Source: Macrostomum lignano
Taxonomy: Eukaryota
Direction of reading: 5' to 3'
Assembly: GCA_002269645.1 (NCBI GenBank)
Contig: NIVC01003156.1
Location: 1 to 64,000, forward strand
Length of the DNA stretch: 64,000 nucleotides
Part shown: positions 1 to 50,634 of the stretch, in pieces
Numbering within the stretch: the first letter of the stretch is position 1
Layout: each line of letters starts with the position of its first letter
Program-made: the position numbers and the translations under genes
The notes under the pieces: model-generated
What the model was told of the DNA's origin: nothing
The model's input: the letters and a program-made list of their open reading frames with translations, nothing else
The model's database searches: none

Positions 1-3000
1 ACAAGAATGCGCTTTAACGATCAGCAGCGAGCATTCTGATCTCGCCGCTGCATCCGTCATTTGGTTCACTTGCTGCTCACAAGCCGCAGCAGCAAGCAGC
101 CGCTATCCGTGCAGGCAGTCAGTCTATTTGTGAATTTTCTGGTGGATCTGAAGAAAACCCGTCCGGCACAGGATTAAAGAGAAAGAGACGATCTGTTTTG
201 GGTGAGTATTATCTGCTGTAGAAGTATTGTACACCAGAGTACTTGTGTTACTTGGTAGAGCACAATTCAAAAGCAATGCAACAATCTCAGTGGCATTGTT
301 GGGACACAAGCTACAAACGCATTGAATAGTAAACACAGCCCAGCCTAGCTCAAGCTAGTAATTTGTTGGGCATTTATTGGGACATTGCAGCCAGGCCTAT
401 TTTTTGAACAGCATTTGTTGGGTCGCACTTATTGGGACAATACTGATTCTAATCGCGACTACTTCTGAGTTCTGACTTTTCAAAACAGACCCAGCATTAG
501 TTGAACACGTTCTATTAAAGGGTTCCTTTATAGCCTATTAATGATTACTAAAGCAAGCCTATCTTAATTGATTTCTTTTCCTCGCAGATTCTGAAGTCAG
601 CCACGCCAGCGACATGCCTAAGAGACAAGAATGCGCTTTAACGATCAGCAGCGAGCATTCTGATCTCGCCGCTGCATCCGTCATTTGGTTCACTTGCTGC
701 TCACAAGCCGCAGCAGCAGCAGCCGCTATCCGTGCAGGCAGTCAGTCTCTTTGTGAATTTTCTGGTGGATCTGAAGAAAACCCGTCCGGCACAGGATTAA
801 AGAGAAAGAGACGATCTGTTTTGGGTGAGTATTATCTGCTGTAGAAGTATTGTACACCAGAGTACTTGTGTTACTTGGTAGAGCACAATTCAAAAGCAAT
901 GCAACAATCTCAGTGGCATTGTTGGGACACAAGCTACAAACGCATGAATAGTAAACACAGCCCAGCCTAGCTCAAGGCTAGTAATTTGTTGGGCATTTAT
1001 TGGGACATTGCAGCCAGGCCTATTTTTGAACAGCATTTGTTGGGTCGCACTTATTGGGACAATACTGATTCTAATCGCGACTACTTCTGAGTTCTGACTT
1101 TTCAAAACAGACCCAGCATTAGTTGAACACGTTCTATTAAAGGGTTCCTTTATAGCCTATTAATGATTACTAAAGCAAGCCTATCTTAATTGATTTCTTT
1201 TCCTCGCAGATTCTGAAGTCAGCCACGCCAGCGACATGCCTAAGAGACAAGAATGCGCTTTAACGATCAGCAGCGAGCATTCTGATCTCGCCGCTGCATC
1301 CGTCATTTGGTTCACTTGCTGCTCACAAGCCGCAGCAGCAGCAGCCGCTATCCGTGCAGGCAGTCAGTCTCTTTGTGAATTTTCTGGTGGATCTGAAGAA
1401 AACCCGTCCGGCACAGGATTAAAGAGAAAGAGACGATCTGTTTTGGGTGAGTATTATCTGCTGTAGAAGTATTGTACACACAGAGTACTTGTGTTACTTG
1501 GTAGAGCACAATTCAAAAGCAATGCAACAATCTCAGTGGCATTGTTGGGACACAAGCTACAAACGCATTGAATAGTAAACACAGCCCAGCCTAGCTCAAG
1601 GCTAGTAATTTGTTGGGCATTTATTGGGACATTGCAGCCAGGCCTATTTTTTGAACAGCATTTGTTGGGTCGCACTTATGGGGACAATACTGATTCTAAT
1701 ACTGATTCTAATCGCGACTACTTCTGAGTTCTGACTTTTCAAAACAGACCCAGCATTAGTTGAACACGTTCTATTAAAGGGTTCCTTTATAGCCTATTAA
1801 TGATTACTAAAGCAAGCCTATCTTAATTGATTTCTTTTCCTCGCAGATTCTGAAGTCAGCCACGCCAGCGACATGCCTAAGAGACAAGAATGCGCTTTAA
1901 CGATCAGCAGCGAGCATTCTGATCTCGCCGCTGCATCCGTCATTTGGTTCACTTGCTGCTCACAAGCCGCAGCAGCAGCAGCAGCCGCTATCCGTGCAGG
2001 CAGTCAGTCTCTTTGTGAATTTTCTGGTGGATCTGAAGAAAACCCGTCCGGCACAGGATTAAAGAGAAAGAGACGATCTGTTTTGGGTGAGTATTATCTG
2101 CTGTAGAAGTATTGTACACCAGAGTACTTGTGTTACTTGGTAGAGCACAATTCAAAAGCAATGCAACAATCTCAGTGGCATTGTTGGGACACAAGCTACA
2201 AACGCATTGAATAGTAAACACAGCCCAGCCTAGCTCAAGGCTAGTAATTTGTTGGGCATTTATTGGGACATTGCAGCCAGGCCTATTTTTTGAACAGCAT
2301 TTGTTGGGTCGCACTTATTGGGACAATACTGATTCTAATCGCGACTACTTCTGAGTTCTGACTTTTCAAAACAGACCCAGCATTAGTTGAACACGTTCTA
2401 TTAAAGGGTTCCTTTATAGCCTATTAATGATTACTAAAGCAAGCCTATCTTAATTGATTTCTTTTCCTCGCAGATTCTGAAGTCAGCCACGCCAGCGACA
2501 TGCCTAAGAGACAAGAATGCGCTTTAACGATCAGCAGCGAGCATTCTGATCTCGCCGCTGCATCCGTCATTTGGTTCACTTGCTGCTCACAAGCCGCAGC
2601 AGCAGCAGCCGCTATCCGTGCAGGCAGTCAGTCTCTTTGTGAATTTTCTGGTGGATCTGAAGAAAACCCGTCCGGCACAGGATTAAAGAGAAAGAGACGA
2701 TCTGTTTTGGGTGAGTATTATCTGCTGTAGAAGTATTGTACACCAGAGTACTTGTGTTACTTGGTAGAGCACAATTCAAAAGCAATGCAACAATCTCAGT
2801 GGCATTGTTGGGACACAAGCTACAAACGCATTGAATAGTAAACACAGCCCAGCCTAGCTCAAGGCTAGTAATTTGTTGGGCATTTATTGGGACATTGCAG
2901 CCAGGCCTATTTTTTGAACAGCATTTGTTGGGTCGCACTTATTGGGACAATACTGATTCTAATCGCGACTACTTCTGAGTTCTGACTTTTCAAAACAGAC

Positions 3001-6000
3001 CCAGCATTAGTTGAACACGTTCTATTAAAGGGTTCCTTTATAGCCTATTAATGATTACTAAAGGCAAGCCTATCTTAATTGATTTCTTTTCCTCGCAGAT
3101 TCTGAAGTCAGCCACGCCAGCGACATGCCTAAGAGACAAGAATGCGCTTTAACGATCAGCAGCGAGCATTCTGATCTCGCCGCTGCATCCGTCATTTGGT
3201 TCACTTGCTGCTCACAAGCCGCAGCAGCAGCAGCAGCAGCAGCAGCAGCCGCTATCCGTGCAGGCAGTCAGTCTATTTGTGAATTTTCTGGTGGATCTGA
3301 AGAAAACCCGTCCGGCACAGGATTAAAGAGAAAGAGACGATCTGTTTTGGGTGAGTATTATCTGCTGTAGAAGTATTGTACACCAGAGTACTTGTGTTAC
3401 TTGGTAGAGCACAATTCAAAAGCAATGCAACAATCTCAGTGGCATTGTTGGGACACAAGCTACAAACGCATTGAATAGTAAACACAGCCCAGCCTAGCTC
3501 AAGGCTAGTAATTTGTTGGGCATTTATTGGGACATTGCAGCCAGGCCTATTTTTTGAACAGCATTTGTTGGGTCGCACTTATTGGGACAATACTGATTCT
3601 AATCGCGACTACTTCTGAGTTCTGACTTTTCAAAACAGACCCAGCATTAGTTGAACACGTTCTATTAAAGGGTTCCTTTATAGCCTATTAATGATTACTA
3701 AAGCAAGCCTATCTTAATTGATTTCTTTTCCTCGCAGATTCTGAAGTCAGCCACGCCAGCGACATGCCTAAGAGACAAGAATGCGCTTTAACGATCAGCA
3801 GCGAGCATTCTGATCTCGCCGCTGCATCCGTCATTTGGTTCACTTGCTGCTCACAAGCCGCAGCAGCAGCAGCCGCTATCCGTGCAGGCAGTCAGTCTCT
3901 TTGTGAATTTTCTGGTGGATCTGAAGAAAACCCGTCCGGCACAGGATTAAAGAGAAAGAGACGATCTGTTTTGGGTGAGTATTATCTGCTGTAGAAGTAT
4001 TGTACACCAGAGTACTTGTGTTACTTGGTAGAGCACAATTGAAAAGCAATGCAACAATCTCAGTGGCATTGTTGGGACACAAGCTACAAACGCATTGAAT
4101 AGTAAACACAGCCCAGCCTAGCTCAAGGCTAGTAATTTGTTGGGCATTTATTGGGACATTGCAGCCAGGCCTATTTTTTGAACAGCATTTGTTGGGTCGC
4201 ACTTATTGGGACAATACTGATTCTAATCGCGACTACTTCTGAGTTCTGACTTTTCAAAACAGACCCAGCATTAGTTGAACACGTTCTATTAAAGGGTTCC
4301 TTTATAGCCTATTAATGATTACTAAAGGCAAGCCTATCTTAATTGATTTCTTTTCCTCGCAGATTCTGAAGTCAGCCACGCCAGCGACATGCCTAAGAGA
4401 CAAGAATGCGCTTTAACGATCAGCAGCGAGCATTCTGATCTCGCCGCTGCATCCGTCATTTGGTTCACTTGCTGCTCACAAGCCGCAGCAGCAGCAGCCG
4501 CTATCCGTGCAGGCAGTCAGTCTCTTTGTGAATTTTCTGGTGGATCTGAAGAAAACCCGTCCGGCACAGGATTAAAGAGAAAGAGACGATCTGTTTTGGG
4601 TGAGTATTATCTGCTGTAGAAGTATTGTACACCAGAGTACTTGTGTTACTTGGTAGAGCACAATTCAAAAGCAATGCAACAATCTCAGTGGCATTGTTGG
4701 GACACAAGCTACAAACGCATTGAATAGTAAACACAGCCCAGCCTAGCTCAAGGCTAGTAATTTGTTGGGCATTTATTGGGACATTGCAGCCAGGCCTATT
4801 TTTTGAACAGCATTTGTTGGGTCGCACTTATTGGGACAATACTGATTCTAATCGCGACTACTTCTGAGTTCTGACTTTTCAAAACAGACCCAGCATTAGT
4901 TGAACACGTTCTATTAAAGGGTTCCTTTATAGCCTATTAATGATTACTAAAGGCAAGCCTATCTTAATTGATTTCTTTTCCTCGCAGATTCTGAAGTCAG
5001 CCACGCCAGCGACATGCCTAAGAGACAAGAATGCGCTTTAACGATCAGCAGCGAGCATTCTGATCTCGCCGCTGCATCCGTCATTTGGTTCACTTGCTGC
5101 TCACAAGCCGCAGCAGCAGCAGCCGCTATCCGTGCAGGCAGTCAGTCTCTTTGTGAATTTTCTGGTGGATCTGAAGAAAACCCGTCCGGCACAGGATTAA
5201 AGAGAAAGAGACGATCTGTTTTGGGTGAGTATTATCTGCTGTAGAAGTATTGTACACCAGAGTACTTGTGTTACTTGGTAGAGCACAATTCAAAAGCAAT
5301 GCAACAATCTCAGTGGCATTGTTGGGACACAAGCTACAAACGCATTGAATAGTAAACACAGCCCAGCCTAGCTCAAGGCTAGTAATTTGTTGGGCATTTA
5401 TTGGGACATTGCAGCCAGGCCTATTTTTTGAACAGCATTTGTTGGGTCGCACTTATTGGGACAATACTGATTCTAATCGCGACTACTTCTGAGTTCTGAC
5501 TTTTCAAAACAGACCCAGCATTAGTTGAACACGTTCTATTAAAGGGTTCCTTTATAGCCTATTAATGATTACTAAAGCAAGCCTATCTTAATTGATTTCT
5601 TTTCCTCGCAGATTCTGAAGTCAGCCACGCCAGCGACATGCCTAAGAGACAAGAATGCGCTTTAACGATCAGCAGCGAGCATTCTGATCTCGCCGCTGCA
5701 TCCGTCATTTGGTTCACTTGCTACTCACAAGCCGCAGCAGCAGCAGCCGCTATCCGTGCAGGCAGTCAGTCTCTTTGTGAATTTTCTGGTGGATCTGAAG
5801 AAAACCCGTCCGGCACAGGATTAAAGAGAAAGAGACGATCTGTTTTGGGTGAGTATTATCTGCTGTAGAAGTATTGTACACCAGAGTACTTGTGTTACTT
5901 GGTAGAGCACAATTGAAAAGCAATGCAACAATCTCAGTGGCATTGTTGGGACACAAGCTACAAACGCATTGAATAGTAAACACAGCCCAGCCTAGCTCAA

Positions 6001-6358
6001 GGCTAGTAATTTGTTGGGCATTTATTGGGACATTGCAGCCAGGCCTATTTTTTGAACAGCATTTGTTGGGTCGCACTTATTGGGACAATACTGATTCTAA
6101 TCGCGACTACTTCTGAGTTCTGACTTTTCAAAACAGACCCAGCATTAGTTGAACACGTTCTATTAAAGGGTTCCTTTATAGCCTATTAATGATTACTAAA
6201 GGCAAGCCTATCTTAATTGATTTCTTTTCCTCGCAGATTCTGAAGTCAGCCACGCCAGCGACATGCCTAAGAGACAAGAATGCGCTTTAACGATCAGCAG
6301 CGAGCATTCTGATCTCGCCGCTGCATCCGTCATTTGGTTCACTTGCTGCTCACAAGCC

Positions 6359-6397
<39 letters not shown>

Positions 6398-8255
6398 GCT
6401 ATCCGTGCAGGCAGTCAGTCTATTTGTGAATTTTCTGGTGGATCTGAAGAAAACCCGTCCGGCACAGGATTAAAGAGAAAGAGACGATCTGTTTTGGGTG
6501 AGTATTATCTGCTGTAGAAGTATTGTACACCAGAGTACTTGTGTTACTTGGTAGAGCACAATTCAAAAGCAATGCAACAATCTCAGTGGCATTGTTGGGA
6601 CACAAGCTACAAACGCATTGAATAGTAAACACAGCCCAGCCTAGCTCAAGGCCAGTAATTTGTTGGGCATTTATTGGGACATTGCAGCCAGGCCTATTTT
6701 TTGAACAGCATTTGTTGGGTCGCACTTATTGGGACAATACTGATTCTAATCGCGACTACTTCTGAGTTCTGACTTTTCAAAACAGACCCAGCATTAGTTG
6801 AACACGTTCTATTAAAGGGTTCCTTTATAGCCTATTAATGATTACTAAAGGCAAGCCTATCTTAATTGATTTCTTTTCCTCGCAGATTCTGAAGTCAGCC
6901 ACGCCAGCGACATGCCTAAGAGACAAGAATGCGCTTTAACGATCAGCAGCGAGCATTCTGATCTCGCCGCTGCATCCGTCATTTGGTTCACTTGCTGCTC
7001 ACAAGCCGCAGCAGCAGCAGCCGCTATCCGTGCAGGCAGTCAGTCTATTTGTGAATTTTCTGGTGGATCTGAAGAAAACCCGTCCGGCACAGGATTAAAG
7101 AGAAAGAGACGATCTGTTTTGGGTGAGTATTATCTGCTGTAGAAGTATTGTACACCAGAGTACTTGTGTTACTTGGTAGAGCACAATTCAAAAGCAATGC
7201 AACAATCTCAGTGGCATTGTTGGGACACAAGCTACAAACGCATTGAATAGTAAACACAGCCCAGCCTAGCTCAAGGCTAGTAATTTGTTGGGCATTTATT
7301 GGGACATTGCAGCCAGGCCTATTTTTTGAACAGCATTTGTTGGGTCGCACTTATTGGGACAATACTGATTCTAATCGCGACTACTTCTGAGTTCTGACTT
7401 TTCAAAACAGACCCAGCATTAGTTGAACACGTTCTATTAAAGGGTTCCTTTATAGCCTATTAATGATTACTAAAGCAAGCCTATCTTAATTGATTTCTTT
7501 TCCTCGCAGATTCTGAAGTCAGCCACGCCAGCGACATGCCTAAGAGACAAGAATGCGCTTTAACGATCAGCAGCGAGCATTCTGATCTCGCCGCTGCATC
7601 CGTCATTTGGTTCACTTGCTGCTCACAAGCCGCAGCAGCAGCAGCCGCTATCCGTGCAGGCAGTCAGTCTCTTTGTGAATTTTCTGGTGGATCTGAAGAA
7701 AACCCGTCCGGCACAGGATTAAAGAGAAAGAGACGATCTGTTTTGGGTGAGTATTATCTGCTGTAGAAGTATTGTACACCAGAGTACTTGTGTTACTTGG
7801 TAGAGCACAATTGAAAAGCAATGCAACAATCTCAGTGGCATTGTTGGGACACAAGCTACAAACGCATTGAATAGTAAACACAGCCCAGCCTAGCTCAAGG
7901 CTAGTAATTTGTTGGGCATTTATTGGGACATTGCAGCCAGGCCTATTTTTTGAACAGCATTTGTTGGGTCGCACTTATTGGGACAATACTGATTCTAATC
8001 GCGACTACTTCTGAGTTCTGACTTTTCAAAACAGACCCAGCATTAGTTGAACACGTTCTATTAAAGGGTTCCTTTATAGCCTATTAATGATTACTAATGC
8101 AAGCCTATCTTAATTGATTTCTTTTCCTCGCAGATTCTGAAGTCAGCAACGCCAGCGACATGCCTAAGAGACAAGAATGCGCTTTAACGATCAGCAGCGA
8201 GCATTCTGATCTCGCCGCTGCATCCGTCATTTGGTTCACTTGCTGCTCACAAGCC

Positions 8256-8297
<42 letters not shown>

Positions 8298-8321
8298 GCT
8301 ATCTGTGCAGCAGTCAGTTAA
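1..8321 (+). repeat. Tandem array of ~624-bp units (13 full starts plus a partial copy at the window edge), near-identical, each containing a (GCA)n tract
   Basis: The same ORF recurs at 614, 1236, 1873, 2500, 3125, 3764, 4389, 5014, 5638, 6263, 6912, 7536 and the same ATG context at 8160; spacing 622-649 bp. Length differences come mainly from (GCA)n and small indels. Confidence 0.98.
588..8321 (+). CDS. Putative repeated-exon gene: 237-nt phase 1-1 exon per unit encoding (D)SEVSHASDMPKRQEC...GLKRKRRSVL; terminal copy ends ...AICAAVS* at 8319-8321
   Basis: Each unit has acceptor ttgatttcttttcctcgcAG (e.g. 587/588) and donor TGG|GTGAGT (e.g. 824/825). Exon length is a multiple of 3 and only the phase-1 frame is open. 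AATAAA at 8442-8447 follows the terminal stop. No transcript evidence. Confidence 0.5.
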
Positions 8322-8525
8322 TTCATGAGTTTTTTGGCGGAGCTGGTTATTTTTTTAATTTTCTGAATCGAGAAGCCGATTAACTGCTGTGTGCTTCACT
8401 GGAATATTATTTAGAGGACGCATTTTTTGCAGTCTGTTTCTAATAAAATCCGGTGCAATGACCGCGGTAGAGCTCTAGCATTTGCTTTTTATAGTATTTG
8501 TGTATATTCTTTTTCAAGCTATGCT

Positions 8526-8772
8526 GGAATTGTTGGGACAGCCCTATCCACACTGGCTATGGTGGAATTGTTGGGACAGCCCTATCCACACTGGCTATGG
8601 TTGAATTGTTGGGACAGCCCTATCCACACTGGCTATGGTGGAATTGTTGGGACAGCCCTATCCACACTGGCTATGGTTGAATTGTTGGGACAGCCCTATC
8701 CACACTGGCTATGGTGGAATTGTTGGGACAGCCCTATCCACACTGGCTATGGTGAAATTGTTGGGACAGCCC
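8526..8772. repeat. 38-bp minisatellite (ggaattgttgggacagccctatccacactggctatggt), ~6.5 copies
   Basis: Directly visible; explains ORFs 8427, 8498 and 8635. Confidence 0.95.
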
Positions 8773-9392
8773 CATACTATAGTGTGTGCTGGCTTCTGCT
8801 ATAGTGTGGTTCATTTCCGCATCCTTTTACGTAGCATTCTGTGGGTCCGAATAGCTGACATGTACCTTTTGAGTAATTCTAGTGATTGTGTCATAATCAA
8901 TAAAGTACATTTTTATGAACAGTGGAGTTTCGCTACAGAATTGTTTTTTCCCAGTGGCACTAAATGTAGCAAATTTTGTTTATTCAGATCGTAAAATTTT
9001 TTTGATATGTGTCAATGTCGTTTGTCTTCGATAACCTTAAAGTCCCTTGCCATTTACCATCCTGTCTTCTATAATCTATGATCGCTGAAATTATCTGGTG
9101 AAATTTGACGCGCTGATATTATTGCCTTAGTGGAATTCAGCAAGACACCAGGGTTTTTTAATTCTGTTTTAGACAAGTATACATGTACAATCTGTTGTGA
9201 GTTCAATGCACCTCGAAAAATGCTTTCCAACTGTTTTCAGTAAGCCAAAAGCATGTTGTCAATAAAAATCTATTTGGTGGGTTGAAAATTGCCTGTGTGG
9301 GGACGTGTGTGTGTGTGATTTTTCGTGTGTCGGAGCAGTCCCAATATGTGCAAGTTTTTGCACACTTGGCCAATAAGTGCCTCGTGCACGTT

Positions 9393-9909
<517 letters not shown>

Positions 9910-9919
9910 AGAGATTATC

Positions 9920-10200
9920 TATACTCCGACAATAGTGTTACTGCGTCCGAACTCCGAATGTGGAAGCCACAAGCACATAGATATCAAAGCTGTCTGATGT
10001 TGCTCATTAGGATGACACTCATTAGGGCCAACCATCAGGGCGCAGAGAATCGTACACGCTTGACGATTCGAAAGTCAAGGACCCATGTACACCCTGTGTG
10101 AGCGTGTGTATGAGTGCAGTGCCCGCGTACAGTATTGCGCGCTTGTATTGTGCTCAAGAGTTCTTGTTTAGTCAACAGGCCATGACAGTAGAAAAAGACA
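9920..10200 (+). mobile_element. Diverged copy of a dispersed SINE-like repeat (body only recognised)
   Basis: gacgattcgaaagtcaagg...tgtacaccctgtgtgagcgtgtgt...gcgcgcttgtat aligns by eye with 38980-39080 (+) and 23100-23200 (-). Confidence 0.5.
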
Positions 10201-10817
10201 CATTGGTCTTCGCTCCGTTCGGACGCCAGTAAAATCACTGTCTCACTCTCCTATTGACCCCGGGTAGGAAATCATTTAGGTCTTAGTTTACCTATATGCT
10301 GTTGAAACGACCCAGGCCTAATTAATTTTGTTATTATTTTCTCTATAAAAATTCGACAACGCGCAGTGCTTGCACCATTCGTTTACGTCTGCATCCGGCG
10401 TCTGTTTGCCATCGTCGCCTCAGCTACGCATGCACCACCAGTTTAAAGCGTTGCGCTGCGACAAAAAGACCAAGTCTTGTCAGCAGATCAACGTCACGAA
10501 CAGGTTAAACGAGGTTAGACCGAGGGTTGAAGTAATTAATAGTTAATAATTATAATAGTCATGCAGATATCAGCTGCGATACATTATAGTTGTTTTCTAT
10601 CCCCGCTTTCCGCTTGACAAAATTATTATTACCTAGCTATGTTTACATTATTGTTATTAAAATTAGTTCACGCACTGAGGGATTAGTTTTTAGATGGTGG
10701 TCCATTTACCTGCCATCGTTAGCATTCAAGGTGTCGGTTTGGACTTTTGACACTCACTCATTTAAGAAATGTTGTGCTTTGTGTGAGCTAACAGGAATCT
10801 TGTTCATTAATGAACAA

Positions 10818-12112
10818 CCGATTCACCAACCGTGCCAATCAAAGAGTCGCCGATTCACCAATCTTGTCATTCTAAGAGTCGCCGATTCACCAATCTTGTC
10901 ATTCAAAGAGTCACCGATTCACCAATCTTGTCATTCTAAGAGTCACCGATTCACCAATCTTGCCAACCAAAGAGTCACAGATTCACCAATCTCGTCATTC
11001 AAAGAGTCGCCGATTCACCAATCTTGTCATTCAAAGAGTCGCCGATTCACCAATCTTGTCATTCAAAGAGTCGCCAATTCACCAATCTTGTCATTCAAAG
11101 AGTCACCGATTCACCAATCTTGTCATTCAAAGAGTCGCCGATTCACCAATCTTGTCATTCAAAGAGCCGCCGATTCACCAATCTTGTCATTCAAAGAGTC
11201 GCCGATTCACCAATCTTGTCAACCAAAGAGTCACCGATTCACCAATCTTGTCATTCAAGAGTCGCCGATTCACCAATCTTGTCATTCAAAGAGTCGCCGA
11301 TTCACCAATCTTGTCATTCAAAGAGTCACCGATTCACCAATCTTGTCATTCAAAGAGTCGCCGATTCACCAATCTTGTCATTCAAAGAGTCACTGATTCA
11401 CCAATCTTGTTATTCAAAGAGTCGCCGATTCACCAATCTTGTCATTCAAAGAGTCGCCGATTCACCAATCTTGTCAACCAAAGAGTCGCCGATTCACCTA
11501 TCTTGTCATTCAAAGAGTCGCCGATTCACCAATCTTGTCATTCAAAGTGTCGCAGATTCACCAATCTTGTCATTCAAAGAGCCGCCGATTCACCAATCTT
11601 GTCATTCAAAGAGTCGCCAATTCACCAATCTTGTCATTCAAAGAGTCGCCGATTCACCAATCTTGTCATTCAAAGAGTCACCGATTCACCAATCTTGTCA
11701 TTCAAAGAGTCACTGATTCACCAATCTTGTTATTCAAAGAGTCGTCGATTCACCAATCTTGTCATTCAAAGAGTCGCCGATTCACCAATCTTGTCAACCA
11801 AAGAGTCACCGATTCACCAATCTTGTCATTCAAAGAGTCGCCGATTCACCAATTTTGTCAACCAAAGAGTCGCCGATTCACCTATTGTGTCATTCAAAGA
11901 GTCGCCGATTCACCAATCTTGTCATTCAAAGAGTCACTGATTCACCAATCTTGTTATTCAAAGAGTCGTCGATTCACCTATCGTGTCATTCAAAGAGTCG
12001 CCGATTCACCAATCTTGTCAACCAAAGAGTCACCGATTCACCAATCTTGTCCTTTAGACTGCTTTATTAGCTCTCCCATTCAGCGAGCCTCTGATTCACC
12101 AATCCTGTCATT
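10818..12112. repeat. 32-bp minisatellite (gagtcgccgattcaccaatcttgtcattcaaa), ~40 copies
   Basis: Directly visible. The unit is not a multiple of 3, so the same peptide cycles through three frames (ORFs 10590-12128). Confidence 0.97.
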
Positions 12113-13029
12113 AATTTTAGTCTTTTAAACTTGACCAACACAATGGCACTATGTCATATGCATAGCAATAGTCCATTCTTATTAAAAAAATAGCTTATCT
12201 AGTTCGTCATTTTCTCTAATTACAAAGCCTAATTTGCTTAATTAAGTACTCTCAAGTTAGCGCTAAAAGTTTTTTCGCCTACCGCTTACTCAAACCTGTA
12301 GACCACGCAGCCACAATCCCACAACCTTGTTCACCTTAGCAATATTTTGCACCCTTTCTTTATTTACTACGTGTAATTAATGTTAATATTTTTTATTGTC
12401 CAATTACCAGCTATGAAAATAATTTAAATCGTAAACGAGAACTATTTCGCTATAAAAATTCTCACACAGTGCCCCAGTCCTGAAACAGCCAAGAAACGGA
12501 CAGCCACACTGTCTAGATGGCTTCAGATATTTAATTCGGCGTCCAAGGTTGTTTAATTGCGATAATTGTTGCCTTTTTACAATATTTTTTAAAATAGAGC
12601 GATTAGCTAAAATGCACAATAAAATGGCGCTGGAGTTTTCCCAGTTATCTATAGCTAGTGTACTCTTAAGAGTTCATCAACTGTACTATGCATACACCTT
12701 GATGAAACACATAGAGATTCGAGCTAGATTTTGACTGGAGTTTTATTATTGAATACGTCTATAATACTATCACACTAGATTAGTAGATAGTAGTGTTTTA
12801 ATGACACCCCGGCACAATAGCAGCGCTTATTATAAGGCACATTTTTAAAAAGTAAATATCATTCCATGTGGCTGGCGCCGTTTATTCTAGTGTATATGAT
12901 GTACAATCTGTAAAACGATTCTTGACTAGATTTTCTACCCCAAGCGTACATTGTTCAGCTTTTCCCACCGTGTCGTCACTTTAATTTACACCAGATGGAT
13001 AAGAATCGACTGTTAATACACGCAGACAG

Positions 13030-13138
13030 TGTACATTCATGAAGGGAAGTGGGCGATGCGTTCTAAAAATAACCGTTAACCTTTAGTTTGTTCGAGGGTG
13101 ACTGTTATTTTTAGCAAGCTTCGCCTCGTGAATGTACA
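13030..13138. mobile_element. Short imperfect palindromic (hairpin/MITE-like) element
   Basis: tgtacattcatgaag...ctaaaaataaccgttaacc is inverted against gggtgactgttatttttag...cgtgaatgtaca. Confidence 0.5.
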
Positions 13139-14101
13139 TTGATTGAATTCCGATGCTAAAAATAACTTCCGTCCTTTCTATCCTGTGTACACGCTCACCC
13201 CCTCTTACCTAAAGTTTAGTCAGCAGTAAAATTTTATTAATACGTACATCCACAACGAAGACAAGAATTTTAATGTTCCGATTATTGTAGGCCGTTTGAT
13301 ACGTCATTTGTTTGTTTTGTTGCAAGAGTACATTAGCAAGATAAACCAATTAGATTCCAAAATACGCTCGTAAATAAATCTAAGTTTTCTTTATTATTGT
13401 CCTAATTTTTCAAAGTTCCTACACGAAGTTCTTTGCCTGCCAGTTAAAATAATCACAATCGTGCTTCTTGTTGTCCCGCAAGCACAGCAGACGGTTTTAT
13501 GAAGTAGCTCTGCAACAAGCTAAATAGTATTGCTTTTTCAAACCAAAAAATCAAATGTTTTACCATTAGCTACTGTGGCTTTTAACGTATTATGATGCCA
13601 TTTTTATTTAAAATTGAATTTATGCCATTACGTTATATTTGAGAGCAAGTTGTAATATTTTTGGTTATTTTTACAGCAAGCCTTAGATTTGCTGAAGGTT
13701 TTTGGTTGCTGTCAAGTGAAATCTGGCTTGGAGTTGGAGTAGGACGGTTTTAATGAGAATTTGTTTTACTTTCGATTGTCAAATCAACTCTTTTTGACTA
13801 GATGTGTTGTGTTGTGAAAATAATTATATAAATTGTTTATGTTTTAAATGTGTTGTTTTTTGTTTTAAATCGGTTTAATTTTTTACTGATGATAGTGGGT
13901 GTCTGTTATACATACACTAACATGTCTAATTTTCACTTTTTTAGCTCGTATAATTACAAATTAACGAGTCAGTGTTTATTGTTGTTTTTCTAGTCAGAAG
14001 TCAGTGTATAAATATTTTGTTTTTCATCAACGCTTTAGTGCTAATTCTACAAATTTATCCATAAATTGCATTTTTCGTTGAAGAGACACGTGCACCTGAC
14101 G

Positions 14102-14495
14102 GGGGCGCTTCATAAGACCTAGATTTCACAACGCCTAAAGCACATGACTTCACAACGCCTAAATTTCGTATCACCTAAATTTAACAACACCTAAAACCGA
14201 AAATGCATCCTATTCCATATCGCCTAAATTTCACAACGCTTAAAAATCTGCATGCTCTTTCATATCGCCTAAACTTCATTTCGCCTAAATTTCACAACAC
14301 CTAAAACTGAATGTGAAGGAGAGAAGCAAAGATTTTAGGCGTTCTGAAACTTAGGCGACATAAAATTTAGGCGATGTGAATGAGGCTGCATTTTCGGTTT
14401 TAGGCGTTATGAAATTTAGGCGATATGAAATTTAAGGCGTTGTGAAGTGTGGTGGTTTTAGGCGTTGTGAAATTTAGTTCTTATGAAAGCGTCCA
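14102..14495. mobile_element. Foldback-type MITE with long modular TIRs and an 8-bp target-site duplication
   Basis: The ~110-bp left arm (cgcttcataagacctagatttcacaacgcctaaa...aaaaccgaaaatgca) is the reverse complement of the right arm. Arms are built of aaatttcacaacgcct-like subrepeats. acctgacg flanks both ends (14094-14101 and 14496-14503). Confidence 0.85.
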
Positions 14496-14697
14496 ACCTG
14501 ACGCATGCAAAGTTACTTTTTTGCCGTTCAATAATGCTATACAAACTATTTATGTTGAAATTGCTATCCGTTGAGTTAGAATTTATTATGCTACTTGTTG
14601 TCTCGCACTGCTTATTGTCGCATAATAATAATTATTATTAAACTATAGTGCACCGCATGATACTATTGTTGTACCTATCTGTCTTTTCATTTTGTAG

Positions 14698-17600
14698 AGC
14701 CACAATCGACAGCACACGCATCAAAGGCGGGTGTCTGCGGCCGGCAATAATCAGACAGGCATTGATGGCGTAGCTTCATGCTCATCTGGCGCTGCTGCTG
14801 CTGCTGCTGTTGCCAGCCCAGGGCAGTCCGGCACAGTGCGATTAAAAAAGCCAACCCAATGCGGTATTAAGAGTTATCGCGTGTTGCGTCACGCCTCCGA
14901 GGTTGGCGCCCTATCGTGCGCCAAATTCTGCGAATGTTCGCTAGACGGCGAGCTGCTTGAAACTGGCGACAAAGAGCAGAACGTAGCTGAGGCTGTTGAA
15001 GCCGACAAAGACGGCGGGGAGTTGACGCCTACAGTTCAGGAGGAGATCAACAAAGATGCAGACGATGACTTTGTTAACATCGAATCAATCAATCCGGTAA
15101 TTGTTCAGCAAATATCTTCCAACTCAAGTGTGCCAGAAGCCGGCGTTGAAGCCACGGAATCGCTCGATCTCGGGCAAGAGGCTGCCAGTTCGGCTGACCT
15201 GCCAGTGCATGCCGGTGACGAAAGGATGAAGAATAGCAAGCCAGCACAGCCGCCGCCGCGACCGCCGCCTCCGCAACCGCGTCGACCAGCGTCGCTTGTA
15301 GCTACTGAGGCCGCTGAAGTCGCTCCAGCTCCGTCGTCAGACGCTGCAAGTGCACCGCCGCCATCATCTTCATCATCGTCAGCATCAGCAGTTCCTCCCT
15401 GCCGTTCGCAGTTACTGTCTAAGCGGTACACAGCGCCTAACATCCAGCCATTGAGTTTAGCTCAGCAGCAGCATCAGGTCGCAGCGCAGCAGCAGCAGCA
15501 GCAGCAGTGCCAGCTCTGGGATCTTCGAGACGATACTCTGACATGCAGAAAGCTTAGTAGGCCAGTTAGCTTGACAGCAGCCAATGCCGCTATAGTGCTT
15601 GGTGGCGGTAAGATTCTGGTAACGAAGCTGTACATTTACTCACCAATGCCTAACACCGTGTGCCACCCCTCCCCTCTCCTTTTGCTTTTTTCTTTGCCTC
15701 TCTCCTTCTTCTTTCTCGCATTTTTTCTTCTAATCTTCTCTTCGACGTCGTGTGTGCCTTTTCTCTTTTTGTCTCCTGTCTGTCTGTCTGTCTGTCAATA
15801 TAGGCTAACGGTGCTACTGGCTCGCAGCAGCAGCAGCAGGCGCATCAGCACCATCTGCTGCAGCACTGTCCGTCTAGTGGGAGCTCCGGTTGTCTAGCGT
15901 CGGGTGCAACCGGCACATCCGGGCAGCAGCAGCAGCAGCAGCAACAGCAGCAACAGTCACAGCCACAGCCACAGCAGCCTCCAGCCTCAGCCTCTGGCAC
16001 ATCCGGCAGATACGTTCGTCGTCCAATGCTAGAAAACTCTGGCATCGGCAGTTCCAATTCGGCGGTAGCCGCCGCGGCCAACGCTGCCACGACGCGAGCG
16101 GAGCTGAAACGAGCCCGTAGCCAAGGTCAGACAAGCGATATTGGCCAGCGGTCTGGCCAGCCACCCCACTGTTATCAGCATCAGCCGCGGCACTATCTTA
16201 GAGTTAATTATTCGCACGCCGCGACCCACTTCGTTCGTAGTTTAGAAGAGCCAACCAGTACCGGCCAGGCAGCCTGCTTTCATGCCGCTTCCACTTCGTT
16301 TGGTAGCCAATTATTATTATTTTATTATTATTTTCAATTAGACAGTTGCTAAATTAACTTATTCTGTTAGATTATTGGCGCACCGCTCAAATCAAATATT
16401 CTCCTTTTAGTTATTTATATCTATGTTTTATGTTGTGAATTCTCCGCTATATAAACTGCTGTGTTGCTTTATAAACTGTTTTGCAACTATCTTTCACTCT
16501 AGCCTGTCTCTGGGACTTCCTGACCCGGCCGACTCAAATCTGACCCATTTAAATCCTGGACTCATTTAAATTTCTGACCCATTTGAGTCTCTGACCCATT
16601 TGAGTCTCTGACCCATTTGACTCTCTGACCCATTTGAGTTTCTGACCCATTTGAGTCTCTGACCCATTTGACTCTCTGACCCATTTGACTCCCTGACCAA
16701 TTTGAGTCTCTGACCCATTTGACTCCCTAACCCATTTGACTTTGACCCATTTCACTCCCTGACCAATTTGAGTCTCTGACCAATTTGAGTCTCTGACCCA
16801 TTTGACTCCCTGACCCATTTGACTCCTGACCCATTTGAGTCTGACCCATTTGACTCCCTGACCAATTTGAGTCTCTGACCCATTTGACTCCCTAACCCAT
16901 TTGACTTTGACCCATTTCACTCCCTGACCAATTTGAGTCTCTGACCAATTTGAGTCTCTGACCCATTTGACTCCCTGACCAATTTGACTCCCTGACCCAT
17001 TTGAGTCTGACCCATTTGACTCCTTGACCCATTTGAGTCTCTGACCCATTTGACTCCTTGACCCATTTGAGTCTCTGACCCATTTGACTCCTTGACCCAT
17101 TTGAGTCTCTGACCCGTTTGACTCCCTGACCCATTTGACTCTCTGACCCGTTTGACTCCCTGACCCATTTGACTCTCTGACCCATTTGACTCCCTGACAC
17201 ATTTGAGTCTCTGACCCATTTCACTCCTTGACCCATTTGAGTCTCTGACCCGTTTGACTCCCTGACCCATTTGACTCTCTGACCCATTTGACTCCCTGAC
17301 ACATTTGAGTCTCTGACCCATTTCACTCCTTGACCCATTTGAGTCTCTGACCCGTTTGACTCCCTGACCCATTTGACCATTTGGTCCATCATAAAGTTGC
17401 AACTCTATATTTAATCATTGTAGTCAGTCTCGCCTTACTTTATAATTTGTGTTGTATACCGCAATTTTTTGTGTTTTACCCTGTTGTTATTAAGATTATA
17501 AACTATTCAGTAACAATCATATGACATCGTTTTATATGCATGCCCTTTTGTATTTCGTCTTAACATCGGTACTAAACTTTCTGCATCACTTTTCGATTAT

Positions 17601-20600: not shown

Positions 20601-21872
20601 GCCAAAATTTAAATTCATTAGTGTTTCTGTGATGTTTTTTGGACTTTTTTCGTCTAGTAATAGATCCTGTTAGTTTAAACAAAAAAGTTTTGAACGATGC
20701 ACGTTTAGTAAATTTTATAAGCTTTTTCGAATTGAGTTTGCTTTACTTTTAGCTGACCTTTCAACAAATTTGACCAAAACGATTAGTTAACAACTTTTAA
20801 ACAAATTTTGTTATTCCAGGTTCAGTCGCACTTTCCAGTGCAGCAATCACGGTCACGCCGTTTACTTTTGTTCGCCAAGCGAAGTACAAAAAATCACCAT
20901 CTGCAGCGATATATGGTCAGTGTTGCGTCATTTCTTTAAAAAACTTCATGACTTTCGAGCATTAAAAAATCGATATTTCTACTTTCAGTAGCTAAATTAG
21001 AACGCAAACTGTTTTTTCTGTATTTTTTCAGCAACGATCTAAACGACATGCTGGCCGATTTGTACACGCCCTGCGATCTGCCGGAGCCACCCAAAAAGAG
21101 TCTGTTTGAAAAGTTTGGCCAAAATCTGTTTGGCAGCGCCAGCGCCGCACCTGTAGATCGCGAACAGATCTGTGAGTATTTATTATTCTACTGAAACTAA
21201 ATTTTTTGAAAAGAGAATTAAAAATAAATTCATCGTTTAACTTGCGTTATCAGTTGGCGAGGCCGCTGGAAAGCCAGCGTCAGGCATTTGCACTGTGAAG
21301 CAGGGCGGCCCACAGCAAAACATGGAAGCTATAAGGGCTCGCGCCGGCGGGGCCAGCTCTGAAATTGCCAACGCGCTTCAGGCAAGTTTTCTGTGTAAAA
21401 CATTTTTATTAACTTTAAACCCACCACCCCATTCCCGGCCAGAGCGTCATGTCAAACCCCAACCAACCCCCAACCACCACCCCATTCCCAGCCAGAGCGT
21501 CAAGTCAAACCCCAACCAACCCCCAACCACCACCCCATTCCCAGACAGAGCGTCAAGTCAAACCCCAACCAACCCCCAACCACCACCCCATTCCCAGCCA
21601 GAGCGTCAACCCCACCACCAAACCCACCACCCCTTCCCCAGACAGAGCACCAACCCCCCTTCTTCGACCCGCTAGCCCAATCAAAAGCAAGCAACTCGCT
21701 AACCAAACGCTGGCTACCCCTCCTACAGCAAGGCCTCGAGCGAGGCGAAAAGCTTGGCGAACTGGACGAACAAACCGAGCGAATGCGCAACTCCGCTCTG
21801 GAGTACCGCAACGTCGCCAGCCAATTGGCCCAAAAGTACAAAGATAAAGACAAGAAATTTTGGCAGTTTTAA
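14698..21872 (+). CDS. STXBP5: Tomosyn (syntaxin-binding protein 5 / Lgl family), 3' exons: 14698-15607 or -15618, 15804-16125, 18252-18365, 18952-19387, 20820-20915, 21032-21171, 21254-21381, 21729-21872
   Basis: The hand-spliced product has tomosyn hallmarks: DNFSRSCSSSTSSLE, TLWIGTSLG, PSGTVIRMLGAI, CLLANGHIVVNSLPGLKPL, RTFQCSNHGHAVYFCSPSE, LYTPCDLPEPP, VDREQIFG, and the C-terminal R-SNARE ERGEKLGELDEQTERM...KYKDKDKKFWQF*. Exon phases agree across the last six exons. The first two listed exons are low-complexity and less certain. The N-terminal WD40 exons were not found in the window. Confidence 0.92.
16520..17392. repeat. ~17-bp minisatellite (ctgacccatttgagtct / ctgacccatttgactcc) in a tomosyn intron
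   Basis: Directly visible; gives the GQxVKWVRESN ORFs. Confidence 0.95.
18500..18895. repeat. Degenerate ~12-bp repeat (aatctactctgc) in a tomosyn intron
   Basis: Directly visible. Confidence 0.85.
20123..20540. repeat. 42-bp minisatellite, ~10 copies, in a tomosyn intron
   Basis: Unit ttgagaatctcaacctgaggtctcaccttgagcacagtgtct; open as a 14-aa repeat on both strands. Confidence 0.95.
21418..21660. repeat. C/A-rich ~53-bp minisatellite (~4 copies) in the last tomosyn intron
   Basis: Repeats of aaaccccaaccaacccccaaccaccaccccattcccagacagagcgtcaagtc. Confidence 0.85.
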
Positions 21873-44120: not shown

Positions 44121-44276
44121 TAGCCGAAAATTCAATTCAGACAATTCGGACTGGGGCAACGCTTACGCAAAATCAATAGAAACAAACCGAAGTTCAAAGC
44201 ATTCTGCCACCGAAGCAAGGTTTGGCCATAGACAAAATTGTCCCCAGTCTGAATTGTCTGAATTGAATGTCCGCTA
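44121..44276. mobile_element. Small MITE-like inverted repeat
   Basis: aattcaattcagacaattcggactggggcaa (44129-44159) is inverted at 44238-44268, with degenerate extension to tagccg / ccgcta. Confidence 0.7.
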
Positions 44277-44316
44277 GTCTTTTTAGAACTTTCTTTAGAA
44301 CTTTTTTTAGAATTTT

Positions 44317-47586: not shown

Positions 47587-50615
<3,029 letters not shown>

Positions 50616-50634
<19 letters not shown>

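What the first reader, a model, noticed from the sequence alone, without database searches (positions are those of the whole stretch)
1..8447. The 624-bp 'satellite' is an array of exon-intron units that could splice into a long repeat protein
Seen: every full unit has a branch-like cttaat, a pyrimidine tract and AG, a 237-nt exon (+3n) and a consensus G|GTGAGT donor. Only the phase-1 frame is open and it re-joins itself (..SVL-D-SEVSH..). The last copy has a 1-nt deletion giving TAA at 8319, followed by unique sequence and AATAAA at 8442, as expected of a terminal exon. Inference: a recently amplified gene segment of at least 13 x 79 aa whose length varies with copy number. The introns are as homogeneous as the exons, so selection on the protein cannot be inferred from this window. 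The partial first copy carries a 1-nt insertion (possibly sequencing error).
Basis: partly seen in the sequence, partly recalled or inferred. Interest (0 to 1): 0.82.

Follow-up and report, generated by a model that had tools for sequence, protein, structure and literature searches.

The report
Spliced exon-intron repeat inside mobile element
The 624-bp repeat in this flatworm (Macrostomum lignano) window is a real tandem array of splice-ready exon-plus-intron cassettes that keeps one reading frame open, but it sits inside a transposon-like module copied to at least six genome sites, and there is no clear sign yet that the encoded repeat protein is made or under selection.

Summary
Window 1-8321 holds 13 donors (TTTTGG|GTGAGT), 13 acceptors, 12 full exons of 237-261 nt (all 3n), introns of 385-400 nt, one self-rejoining open frame, TAA at 8319 and AATAAA at 8442.

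The organism is Macrostomum lignano. Transcript-derived GenBank coding sequences in the Mlig_3_7 assembly use exactly the predicted junctions, so splicing has indirect RNA support. One model is unspliced.

New findings:
- The array is not a single host locus. The array, a 2.48-kb left arm and a 1.0-kb right arm form a sharply bounded module. It ends in imperfect 38-bp inverted repeats abutting (TG)n.
- This module occurs in at least 6 unrelated genomic contexts, with 8 to 20 or more exons per copy.
- It has no transposase, so it looks like a non-autonomous element.

Evidence on coding is equivocal:
- Every unit ends in a furin-type KRKRR site, and a diverged paralogous family keeps that junction block.
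- Against this, exons are no more conserved than introns, there is no third-codon-position bias, C-termini differ by frameshift, there is no upstream coding exon or clear signal peptide, there are no homologues outside the species, and AlphaFold finds no fold.

Verdict: a real, spliced exon-intron macrosatellite carried by a dispersed element. A translated "long repeat protein" is unproven.

The parts
1..201 (+). Exon of the first unit, truncated by the window edge. It carries a +1 A insertion at about 94-95 in the GCA run, which breaks the frame.
   Evidence: alignment to the exon at 588-824.
202..8133 (+). Body of the array: 13 introns (385-400 nt, GTGAGT...CTTAAT...polyY-CAG) alternating with 12 full exons. 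Each intron carries 3 exact TTGGGAC motifs.
   Evidence: Introns run 202-587, 825-1209, 1447-1846, 2087-2473, 2711-3098, 3351-3737, 3975-4362, 4600-4987, 5225-5611, 5849-6236, 6498-6885, 7123-7509 and 7747-8133.
588..824 (+). Exon, 237 nt, phase 1-1. It encodes (D)SEVSHASDMPKRQECALTISSEHSDLAAASVIWFTCCSQA7IRAGSQSLCEFSGGSEENPSGTGLKRKRRSVL.
1210..1446 (+). Exon, 237 nt.
1847..2086 (+). Exon, 240 nt (one extra Ala codon).
2474..2710 (+). Exon, 237 nt.
3099..3350 (+). Exon, 252 nt (poly-Ala 12; Ile variant SQSICEF).
3738..3974 (+). Exon, 237 nt.
4363..4599 (+). Exon, 237 nt.
4988..5224 (+). Exon, 237 nt.
5612..5848 (+). Exon, 237 nt (Cys to Tyr variant FTCYSQ).
6237..6497 (+). Exon, 261 nt (poly-Ala 15).
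6886..7122 (+). Exon, 237 nt.
7510..7746 (+). Exon, 237 nt.
8134..8321 (+). Terminal exon coding part: ...SQA(n)ICAAVS, then TAA at 8319-8321. Similarity to the repeat unit fades at about unit position 186.
   Evidence: L003 has the same short tail; L001 and L004 read on to ...IRAGSQLIDEFSGRAGYFLSF*.
8442..8447 (+). AATAAA polyadenylation signal, conserved in all copies at the same offset.
8322..9394 (+). Right arm of the dispersed module (3' UTR plus about 1 kb), 95-99% identical in L001, L002, L003, L004, L005 and L009. Homology stops sharply at about 9400.
8518..8772 (+). 38-bp minisatellite (6.7 copies) inside the right arm. Its core ATTGTTGGGAC is the same motif found in the introns and the terminal repeats.
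9353..9389 (-). Right terminal inverted repeat. Its reverse complement is GTGCACGAGGCACTTATTGGCCAAGTGTGCAAAAACT.
   Evidence: 29 of 38 matches to the left terminus, score 29 against shuffles 13.5±2.1 with a maximum of 24; exact hit at 9360-9389.
9390..9909 (.). GTTTG followed by (TG)n and then (TGTC)n. (TG)n abuts both ends of the module in every copy. Sequence beyond it is unrelated between copies.

Best explanation
The array is an expandable macrosatellite of exon-plus-intron cassettes. It forms the interior of a dispersed, transposon-like module of Macrostomum lignano.

The module's layout is:
- (TG)n and a left inverted repeat;
- a 2.48-kb left arm with no long ORF, several strong + strand donors and an ATG-free run of candidate 5' UTR exons;
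- a first partial exon entered through ...cccacgcacag|GTTCATCC;
- n cassettes of 622-650 bp;
- a terminal exon with a stop codon, then AATAAA;
- a 38-bp minisatellite, a right inverted repeat and (TG)n.

Shown:
- The module has sharp, shared ends.
- It lies in at least 6 unrelated contexts.
- It carries 8 to 20 or more exons per copy.
- Transcript-derived coding sequences use the predicted GT-AG junctions.

Inferred:
- Unequal recombination and replication slippage change cassette number and poly-Ala length.
- Because each cassette is a 3n, phase-1/phase-1 exon, any copy number stays in frame.
- Splicing therefore yields mRNAs with an open repeat ORF of n x 79-87 codons. The first AUG is MPKRQEC in the second exon.
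- Every unit ends in R-K-R-R|S, which fits both a furin/proprotein-convertase site and a nuclear localisation signal.

Whether the ORF is translated and functional is unresolved, at roughly even odds. If it is made, the product is a low-complexity, probably disordered repeat protein or polyprotein that is evolving without detectable purifying selection.
For: Anatomy.

Species and family.

Transcript-based origin of the GenBank models: (PMC5730564: StringTie/TACO plus BLAT-mapped de novo transcripts; repeats masked with TRF default settings, which cannot see a period above 500; compare).

Junction use:
- P0040 translates exactly after removal of the predicted introns.
- P0031, P0001 and P0032 do the same apart from a 12-nt poly-Ala gap, and recur at many array positions.

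The module:
- Shared 5' flank 97-98.5% identical.
- Homology limits identical in every copy.
- Unrelated outside flanks: 6 right contexts and 4 left contexts.
- Inverted termini at symmetric distance from the (TG)n ends, z of about 7.
- TTGGGAC motif 33 times on the + strand and once inverted at the right end, with none elsewhere in the window.
- No transposase-like ORF and no Pfam hit in the arms.

Copy-number and poly-Ala variation.

Upstream structure: the candidate upstream exons and the first array exon hold 0 ATG in 544 nt against about 8 expected, so the first AUG falls in the main frame.

Significance: exon-like configuration 0 of 20,000 by chance.

Diverged B-type family (P0057, A0A1I8HX90): it keeps an 80-codon unit, the same junction and the identical block GLKRKRRSVL|AS.VSNASDMPKR.
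Against: - No RNA reads were examined directly. Splicing rests on database coding sequences whose accessions are masked here, and the one named model (PAA85997.1) reads through the donor, so it is unspliced.
- Mobility is inferred from dispersed copies and imperfect TIRs only. No empty site, no unambiguous target-site duplication and no autonomous partner were found. The (TG)n ends could instead mark recombination-prone breakpoints of segmental duplications in a genome with 180-312 Mb of duplicated sequence.
- Against a functional protein: pi is 0.0078 in exons and 0.0040 in introns, and variable sites fall 6/5/4 by codon position.
- 22 of 107 exons are frame-broken in Mlig_3_7, although these may be PacBio errors, since 0 of 12 are broken in the window.
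- Frameshifts produce three different C-termini.
- One exon is interrupted by a 385-bp retroposon-like insert in L005/L009.
- No homologue was found among 1.84 billion representative proteins, and Pfam finds nothing.
- AlphaFold gives a mean pLDDT of 33.
- No ORF-preserving chain links any upstream ATG to the array.
Confidence: 0.6

Rival explanations
1. This is a functional secreted polyprotein or multi-copy peptide precursor, the strong form of the first reader's idea. Translation starts at MPKRQEC. The hydrophobic LAAASVIWFTCC... segment acts as a signal sequence. A furin-type convertase then cuts after each KRKRR, releasing many copies of a peptide of about 75 residues with 4 cysteines. 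Copy number would set the dose.
For: - There is a perfect R-X-K/R-R|S site at the end of every unit.
- It is identical in the roughly 50%-diverged B-type family, where the conserved block spans the exon-exon junction and most replacements are conservative.
- The frame is retained in B despite an apparent compensated frameshift.
- All 12 full exons in the window are intact.
- The presumptive 5' UTR is ATG-free, so the first AUG is in frame.
- UniProt labels one model (A0A1I8JH02) 'Secreted protein'.
Against: - There is no N-terminal signal peptide exon. The hydrophobic stretch starts at residue 18, recurs in every unit, and is not conserved in the B type; the cysteines are not conserved either.
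- There is no excess conservation of exons, and the dN/dS-like pattern is about neutral.
- C-termini are variable.
- There is no predicted fold, and no homology to known polyproteins.
- The B type is known only because it was called as a protein, which is an ascertainment bias.
Confidence: 0.25
2. This is a non-coding internal satellite of a transposable element. The cassette would be a relic of a captured or ancestral exon-intron fragment that was amplified. Its splice sites still work, so read-through or element-driven transcripts get spliced, but the open frame is incidental and nothing is translated.
For: - The array is dispersed and TIR-bounded, with no transposase.
- The TIR core motif is reiterated in the 'introns' and in the adjacent minisatellite, as is common for element-internal repeats.
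- Variation looks neutral.
- There are frame-broken units and a retroposon-disrupted exon.
- The sequence is an orphan.
- The minus strand has equally long stop-free runs.
Against: - All 12 full exons in the window are open.
- The exon-like configuration is very unlikely by chance.
- The stop codon and AATAAA follow in a gene-like arrangement.
- The upstream exons are ATG-free.
- The junction block and frame are conserved in the diverged B family.
Confidence: 0.35
3. This is an ordinary host gene multiplied by polyploidy or segmental duplication, and is not mobile. The copies would be homeologues or haplotigs, and the sharp ends would be duplication breakpoints at (TG)n microsatellites.
For: - The DV1 assembly is highly redundant.
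- The copies are only 2-3% diverged.
- L005 and L009 are clearly the same locus.
- Microsatellites sit at both ends.
Against: - Homology ends at the same nucleotide positions in every copy.
- Six right and four left outside flanks share nothing over 4-5 kb. Homeologues would stay collinear.
- The termini are significant inverted repeats at symmetric positions.
- One copy lies inside a myosin-II intron and another lies downstream of a cathepsin-L gene.
Confidence: 0.15
4. This is an assembly artefact or a chance resemblance, with one or two real copies inflated by the assembler, or with no real exons at all.
For: Long near-identical repeats are error-prone in assemblies, and the older assembly shows many 1-nt indels.
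Against: - Two independent assemblies show arrays.
- Units are individually distinguishable by poly-Ala length and point variants.
- Array lengths differ between loci.
- Chance configuration is 0 of 20,000.
- Transcript-derived models use the junctions.
Confidence: 0.03

Closest known systems
Exon-intron VNTR genes, e.g. the human LPA kringle-IV type 2 repeat (5.5-kb units of two exons) and the NBPF/Olduvai exon doublets (from my own knowledge)
   Same: The units are tandem and each contains complete exon(s) plus intron. Introns are as homogenised as exons. Phases are symmetric, so any copy number stays in frame. Copy number varies and sets ORF length.
   Different: The unit is much smaller (0.62 kb, one exon). 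The encoded unit is a low-complexity orphan sequence with no recognisable domain. The whole gene-like unit sits inside a dispersed TIR-bounded module, and translation is unproven.
Transposable elements with internal tandem-repeat arrays, e.g. Tetris/foldback-type elements in Drosophila, satellite-bearing Helitron/MITE derivatives in bivalves, and the SVA VNTR (from my own knowledge)
   Same: It is a non-autonomous element with defined termini whose interior is an expandable tandem array. Terminal motifs are reiterated internally, and copy number differs between insertions.
   Different: The internal repeat is a complete, splice-competent exon-intron cassette with an open frame, a terminal stop and a poly(A) signal, rather than anonymous satellite. 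The superfamily is unknown, and no TSD or transposase has been identified.
Convertase-processed polyproteins, e.g. nematode polyprotein allergens (ABA-1/NPA), multi-copy neuropeptide and antimicrobial-peptide precursors, and yeast alpha-factor (from my own knowledge)
   Same: The units are head-to-tail and identical, and each ends in a tetrabasic R-X-K/R-R site.
   Different: There is no signal peptide exon, no sequence or Pfam similarity and no evidence of processing. The polybasic motif could equally be a nuclear localisation signal or a purine-rich splicing enhancer at DNA level.
Pack-MULE, Helitron or CACTA gene-fragment capture (from my own knowledge)
   Same: A non-autonomous DNA element carries host-like exon-intron sequence that is transcribed and spliced.
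   Different: No parental host gene was found, because the family has no relative outside these arrays. The captured unit has also been tandemly amplified.

Membership tests
Exon-intron VNTR gene (LPA KIV-2 type) | Tandem units each containing a whole exon and intron with intact splice signals | tested here: met
   There are 13 of 13 donors and acceptors in the window. Across 9 loci, 107 of 107 units have the donor TGGGTGAGT and 107 of 107 have an acceptor AG.
Exon-intron VNTR gene (LPA KIV-2 type) | Exon length 3n with symmetric phase, so the frame is kept at any copy number | tested here: met
   All 12 full exons in the window are 3n, and the frame rejoins itself. In the older assembly 86 of 107 exons are 3n.
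Exon-intron VNTR gene (LPA KIV-2 type) | Units joined exon-to-exon in mature RNA | tested here: inconclusive
   Transcript-derived GenBank coding sequences contain the junction, and P0040 translates exactly after intron removal. However, no reads were inspected, accessions are masked, and PAA85997.1 is unspliced.
Exon-intron VNTR gene (LPA KIV-2 type) | Copy-number polymorphism | tested here: met
   Different copies or loci hold 8, 10, 18, at least 14 and at least 20 exons. Variation between individuals was not testable.
Exon-intron VNTR gene (LPA KIV-2 type) | Translated repeat protein | not testable with these tools
   No proteomic or Ribo-seq data are available. Indirect indicators are equivocal.
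Non-autonomous TIR DNA transposon | Terminal inverted repeats | tested here: met
   There are 29 of 38 matches, placed 23 and 25 nt from the two ends. The score is 29 against shuffles of 13.5±2.1 with a maximum of 24.
Non-autonomous TIR DNA transposon | Multiple copies with identical ends in unrelated genomic contexts | tested here: met
   The boundaries are the same in all copies. There are 6 distinct right flanks and 4 distinct left flanks.
Non-autonomous TIR DNA transposon | Target-site duplication | tested here: inconclusive
   GTTT and (TG)n flank both termini in every copy. A TSD, a target preference and element-borne sequence cannot be told apart.
Non-autonomous TIR DNA transposon | Empty site / insertion polymorphism | not testable with these tools
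   This was attempted through the myosin gene that hosts the L003 copy, but the search returned no M. lignano myosins.
Non-autonomous TIR DNA transposon | No transposase of its own, with an autonomous partner elsewhere | tested here: inconclusive
   The arms have no long ORF and no Pfam hit. A partner could not be searched for.
Convertase-processed polyprotein / peptide precursor | Repeated units separated by R-X-K/R-R sites | tested here: met
   KRKRR|S is in every unit and is identical in the B-type family.
Convertase-processed polyprotein / peptide precursor | N-terminal signal peptide | tested here: inconclusive
   No upstream coding exon can be chained to the array. The first Met is followed by a hydrophobic stretch only from residue 18. 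One UniProt model is named 'Secreted protein'. No signal-peptide predictor was available.
Convertase-processed polyprotein / peptide precursor | Sequence membership in a known polyprotein family (e.g. nematode NPA) | tested here: not met
   Pfam gives nothing above cut-off. HMMER against 1.84 billion representatives finds only this family.
Classical satellite DNA | Long non-coding, non-transcribed arrays in heterochromatin | tested here: not met
   The arrays are 5-13 kb, lie in gene-rich surroundings, and have gene-like ends and transcript models.
Spliced-leader RNA gene repeat | Contains the 35-nt M. lignano SL sequence upstream of a donor | tested here: not met
   The SL sequence from PMC8629364 has 0 matches in the window with up to 3 mismatches. 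Rfam finds nothing.

The most novel reading that the evidence does not exclude
A mobile element carries and spreads a complete, self-contained gene whose coding region is an expandable array of in-frame exon-intron cassettes. Each insertion would deliver a length-variable mRNA encoding a KRKRR-punctuated polyprotein that is translated and cut into many identical peptides. The transposon would then act as a vehicle for a dose-tunable peptide factory, or the repeat protein would serve the element itself, for example as a nuclear-targeted factor that binds the reiterated TTGGGAC motif.
Probability: 0.2. Interest if true: 0.7.

Novelty: new variant of a known kind. Interest (0 to 1): 0.45.

Why it matters
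- Biology: if the reading holds, it joins two processes usually studied apart, namely exon-cassette VNTR expansion and transposon-mediated dispersal. It offers a simple route by which a lineage-restricted, length-variable ORF can arise, multiply and be tested by selection at several loci at once.
- Annotation: it shows a concrete blind spot. Repeats with periods above 500 bp escape TRF masking and enter protein databases as dozens of frame-hopping 'uncharacterised' or mis-named proteins (UCH, Rho-GAP, BAF250_C and others).
- Assembly: in Macrostomum, a regeneration and transgenesis model, such modules may also contribute to assembly redundancy.

Tried and rejected
1. Relatives outside the species. 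A word-indexed search, a search with the diverged P0057 and a full HMMER scan of 1.84 billion representatives found only M. lignano family members. P0063 is an unrelated bacterial PKD-repeat protein.
2. Domain searches of the unit, the B-type unit and the arm ORFs gave nothing above cut-off. Bd3614_N, Ykof and ApbE scored below cut-off and were dismissed.
3. DNA of the diverged B-type array, needed for dN/dS, is not in any fetched locus and has no genomic record.
4. An exact look-up of P0003 and of the window's unspliced ORF (614-844) in public assemblies, including RNA-seq-derived ones, found nothing on record.
5. The empty-site test through the myosin gene hosting the L003 copy failed, because the search returned no M. 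lignano myosin.
6. An upstream coding exon with a signal peptide was sought. An ORF MTSLLAWVWAAILCSK... looked promising, but no ORF-preserving splice chain reaches the array in phase 1.
7. The SL-RNA gene repeat idea was rejected.
8. The 400-bp gap in L005/L009 is not a triplet expansion. It is a retroposon-like insertion.
9. The UniProt models with junctions IRAG|NSEVSH, KKT|HSEVSH and SVLA|SILISPL were considered as evidence of alternative splicing. I rejected them as unreliable, because they track frame-breaking indels in the older assembly and use weak cryptic sites. The ML2 annotation paper was not available.
10. Literature searches by gene ID, peptide strings and topic found no description of this repeat.
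11. Structure prediction gave no usable model, so no fold search was run.

Full report
**1. The observation**

The window is eukaryotic and crowded with mini- and microsatellites. TRF did not report a 624-bp period because its period limit is 500, so I dissected the array directly.

- Exact-motif scans found 13 acceptors CCTCGCAG|ATTCTGAAG, 13 donors TTTTGG|GTGAGT and 13 CTTAAT boxes, all in register.
- The 12 full exons are 237 nt (nine of them), 240, 252 and 261 nt. Every length difference is a change in a GCA run. Introns are 385-400 nt.
- One frame only is open. It encodes (D)SEVSHASDMPKRQECALTISSEHSDLAAASVIWFTCCSQ(A)7-15IRAGSQS[L/I]CEFSGGSEENPSGTGLKRKRRSVL and rejoins itself across the junction.
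- The truncated first copy has an extra A at about 94-95. The last copy lacks one G, which gives TAA at 8319. AATAAA is at 8442.

**2. Is it more than chance?**

An open 79-codon frame alone is not remarkable, because the minus strand of the 'intron' has stop-free runs of 88 and 81 codons. The full configuration is another matter. It combines a 12-of-13 pyrimidine acceptor, a GTRAGT donor, an exon of at least 200 nt that is 3n, and an open frame compatible with itself. Random 622-mers from the same genome showed this in 0 of 20,000 trials, and in 0.36% of trials with a relaxed acceptor.

**3. Organism and relatives**

- The unit peptide hits only Macrostomum lignano proteins. These are UniProt models from the older ML2 annotation and NCBI proteins of assembly Mlig_3_7.
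- A full HMMER scan of 1.84 billion representatives found nothing outside this family. Pfam found nothing.
- A diverged paralogous family exists (P0057 = A0A1I8HX90; P0028). Its 80-residue units keep the junction and an identical GLKRKRRSVL|AS.VSNASDMPKR block.
- In that family the GCA/CAG-rich centre is unalignable and weakly resembles the A-type frame 0, which suggests a compensated frameshift.

**4. Is it spliced?**

The GenBank annotation of Mlig_3_7 was built from StringTie/TACO assemblies and BLAT-mapped de novo transcripts. It was filtered against TRF-masked repeats (PMC5730564), and this array escapes that filter.

- NCBI-sourced partial coding sequences (P0031-P0042, P0001) contain SVL|DSEVSH or SVL|ASEVSN.
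- P0040 equals the genomic translation after removal of exactly the two predicted introns.
- The others differ only by a 12-15-nt gap inside the poly-Ala run, and they recur at many array positions. This is the behaviour of one transcript sequence mapped repeatedly, and not of an ab initio or protein-chaining caller.
- PAA85997.1 (BOX15_Mlig020682g1) reads through the donor (…RRSVL-GEY), so unspliced RNA is represented too.

I treat splicing as indirectly supported. No reads could be inspected.

The many UniProt models that hop between frames through cryptic junctions track 1-2-nt indels in the older assemblies. I do not count them as evidence.

**5. The wider structure**

Fetching the loci that encode these proteins (L001-L010, all Mlig_3_7) showed the same array with 8 to 20 or more exons.

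- All complete arrays begin at unit position about 68, directly after ...ttttcttttgtgcgcccacgcacag|GTTCATCC.
- All end at unit position about 186, followed by the same 3' sequence.
- The upstream 2.1 kb is 97-98.5% identical among five loci.
- Homology stops at the same nucleotide in every copy: 2.48 kb upstream of the array and about 1.0 kb downstream, which is window position about 9400.
- Beyond those points, six right flanks and four left flanks share nothing over 4-5 kb. Only L005 and L009 are the same locus.
- Both ends abut (TG)n.
- The termini are imperfect inverted repeats, GTGCATTAGGCATTTCTTGGGACAAGCGTGTATAAACT against the reverse complement GTGCACGAGGCACTTATT-GGCCAAGTGTGCAAAAACT. 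They match at 29 of 38 positions, with a score of 29 against shuffles of 13.5±2.1 and a maximum of 24, and they sit 23 and 25 nt from the respective ends.
- Their core TTGGGAC occurs three times in every intron and in each copy of the 38-bp minisatellite (window 8518-8772). It occurs once, inverted, at the right end, and nowhere else in the window.
- The arms have no long ORF and no Pfam hit.
- One copy lies in a roughly 15-kb intron of a myosin-II heavy-chain gene. Another lies downstream of a cathepsin-L gene.

The simplest reading is a non-autonomous, TIR-bounded dispersed element whose interior is this array. I could not obtain an empty site or an unambiguous target-site duplication. Mobility is therefore inferred and has not been shown.

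**6. Gene-like features of the module**

- The left arm has four GTRAGT donors on the + strand against one on the – strand. Some pair with acceptors into short candidate exons.
- Those candidate exons plus the first partial array exon contain no ATG in 544 nt, against about 8 expected. One acceptor is specific to L003.
- The first AUG of a spliced RNA would then be MPKRQEC, in the main frame.
- No ORF-preserving chain links any upstream ATG to the array, so there is no separate signal-peptide exon.
- The terminal exon, its stop and AATAAA are present in all copies. Frameshifts give three different C-termini: ICAAVS* (window and L003), IRAGSQLIDEFSGRAGYFLSF* (L001 and L004) and NCAAVSYFMSFLAELVIFLIF* (L002).

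**7. Is the protein under selection?**

Across 107 units from nine loci:
- Nucleotide diversity is 0.0078 in exons and 0.0040 in introns.
- Variable columns are 6.3% of exon columns and 5.4% of intron columns.
- Variable exon sites fall 6/5/4 on codon positions 1/2/3.
- The common variants are mostly non-synonymous: D/A, H/N and L/I.

Within the window, exons have no 1-nt indels and introns have four. With these counts that difference is not significant.

In Mlig_3_7, 22 of 107 exons are frame-broken, compared with 0 of 12 in the window. These may be PacBio errors. One exon of the L005/L009 copy is split by a 385-bp GC-rich insert with a (GAAA)n tail.

AlphaFold2 gives a mean pLDDT of 33.

On the other side, the diverged B family conserves a roughly 56-residue block that becomes contiguous only after splicing, with mostly conservative changes. 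Ascertainment bias applies here, because we see B only because it was called as a protein.

Overall the coding status is open.

**8. Mechanism**

Shown:
- The cassette anatomy.
- The dispersed module with defined inverted termini.
- Copy-number and poly-Ala variation.
- Transcript models that use the junctions.

Inferred:
- Unequal exchange or slippage changes cassette number, and the phase-1/3n design keeps any array in frame.
- Transcription may start in the left arm or come from host read-through, with splicing at the canonical sites and polyadenylation after 8447.
- If the ORF is translated from MPKRQEC, the product is a disordered repeat protein punctuated by R-K-R-R|S. It could be cut by furin-type convertases if it enters the secretory pathway, or imported into the nucleus if it does not.

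**9. Comparison and novelty**

It works like exon-intron VNTR genes such as LPA KIV-2, and like transposable elements with internal arrays. It resembles polyprotein precursors only in the repeated tetrabasic site. It fails sequence membership in any known family. No paper in the held library describes it.

I rate it a new variant of known kinds. It is moderately interesting, with an annotation lesson attached.

Noticed in passing
window 8518-8772; introns throughout 202-8133; 9338-9344 (minus strand): The 38-bp minisatellite downstream of the array, three sites in every intron and both module termini share the core (A)TTGTTGGGAC / TTGGGAC. This suggests that the 'intron' and the minisatellite grew out of the element's own terminal or subterminal motif, a possible transposase-binding site.
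   Followed up: partly
window 9395-64000: The density of tandem repeats is extraordinary. About 30 separate mini- and microsatellite arrays occur in 55 kb, including (TGTC)130, (TTAG)156, (ATAG)122, (GACA)162, (CTA)134, and 12- to 53-bp minisatellites of 10-50 copies. They often alternate with short unique stretches.
   Followed up: no
window 28494-29780 (-), 39281-40351 (-) and 38368-38742 (-): Two paralogous, apparently intron-poor rhodopsin-family GPCR ORFs (7tm_1, E 1e-17 and 3e-15) lie in tandem on the minus strand. They share a C-terminal motif NFWVYL[IV]FVRSFRRR.
   Followed up: partly
window ~44200-46800: A GC-rich island (64% GC against about 43% elsewhere) has overlapping long ORFs on both strands and an RVT_1 reverse-transcriptase hit (44854-45795). 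It is probably a degraded non-LTR retrotransposon.
   Followed up: partly
window 48490-50634 (+): A 714-aa ORF with no Pfam match contains a poly-Thr tract and is followed by a 148-aa ORF at 50556-51002. Its function is unknown.
   Followed up: no
window 57714-58076 (-), 62825-63400 (-), 18900-19391 (+): Exons of ordinary animal genes are present: a matrixin (MMP) fragment with an RCGVAD cysteine switch, a ribosomal protein S8e ORF, and an Lgl/tomosyn-like C-terminal fragment.
   Followed up: partly
L005 ~8376-8760 and L009 ~11220-11605: A 385-bp GC-rich insertion ending in (GAAA)n, which looks like a SINE or retroposon, sits inside the GCA run of one array exon. It is flanked by GCA repeats on both sides and disrupts that cassette in this copy of the module.
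   Followed up: partly
L003 5424-14794 within a gene call spanning 3205-21825: One copy of the module lies in the same orientation inside a roughly 15-kb intron of a myosin-II heavy-chain gene. The flanking exons are ...GKFIRINFDTTGFIAGANIET and [25 protein letters not shown].... Its strong splice sites could interfere with myosin splicing.
   Followed up: partly
protein databases (P0021-P0030, P0045, P0051, P0054, P0059-P0061): Dozens of UniProt entries for this repeat are frame-hopping chimeras. Some carry misleading automatic names (UCH, Rho-GAP, BAF250_C and DRIM 'domain-containing'). The cause appears to be indels in the older assembly that a gene finder rescued through cryptic junctions.
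   Followed up: partly
P0057 / P0028 (UniProt A0A1I8HX90, A0A1I8FV09); genomic locus not retrieved: A second repeat family, about 50% diverged, has 80-residue units, the same junction and the same KRKRRSVL site, plus a homologous terminal tail (...SCGAGFFIVSES against ...SGRAGYFLSF). Its middle part seems to be read in a different frame from the A type.
   Followed up: partly
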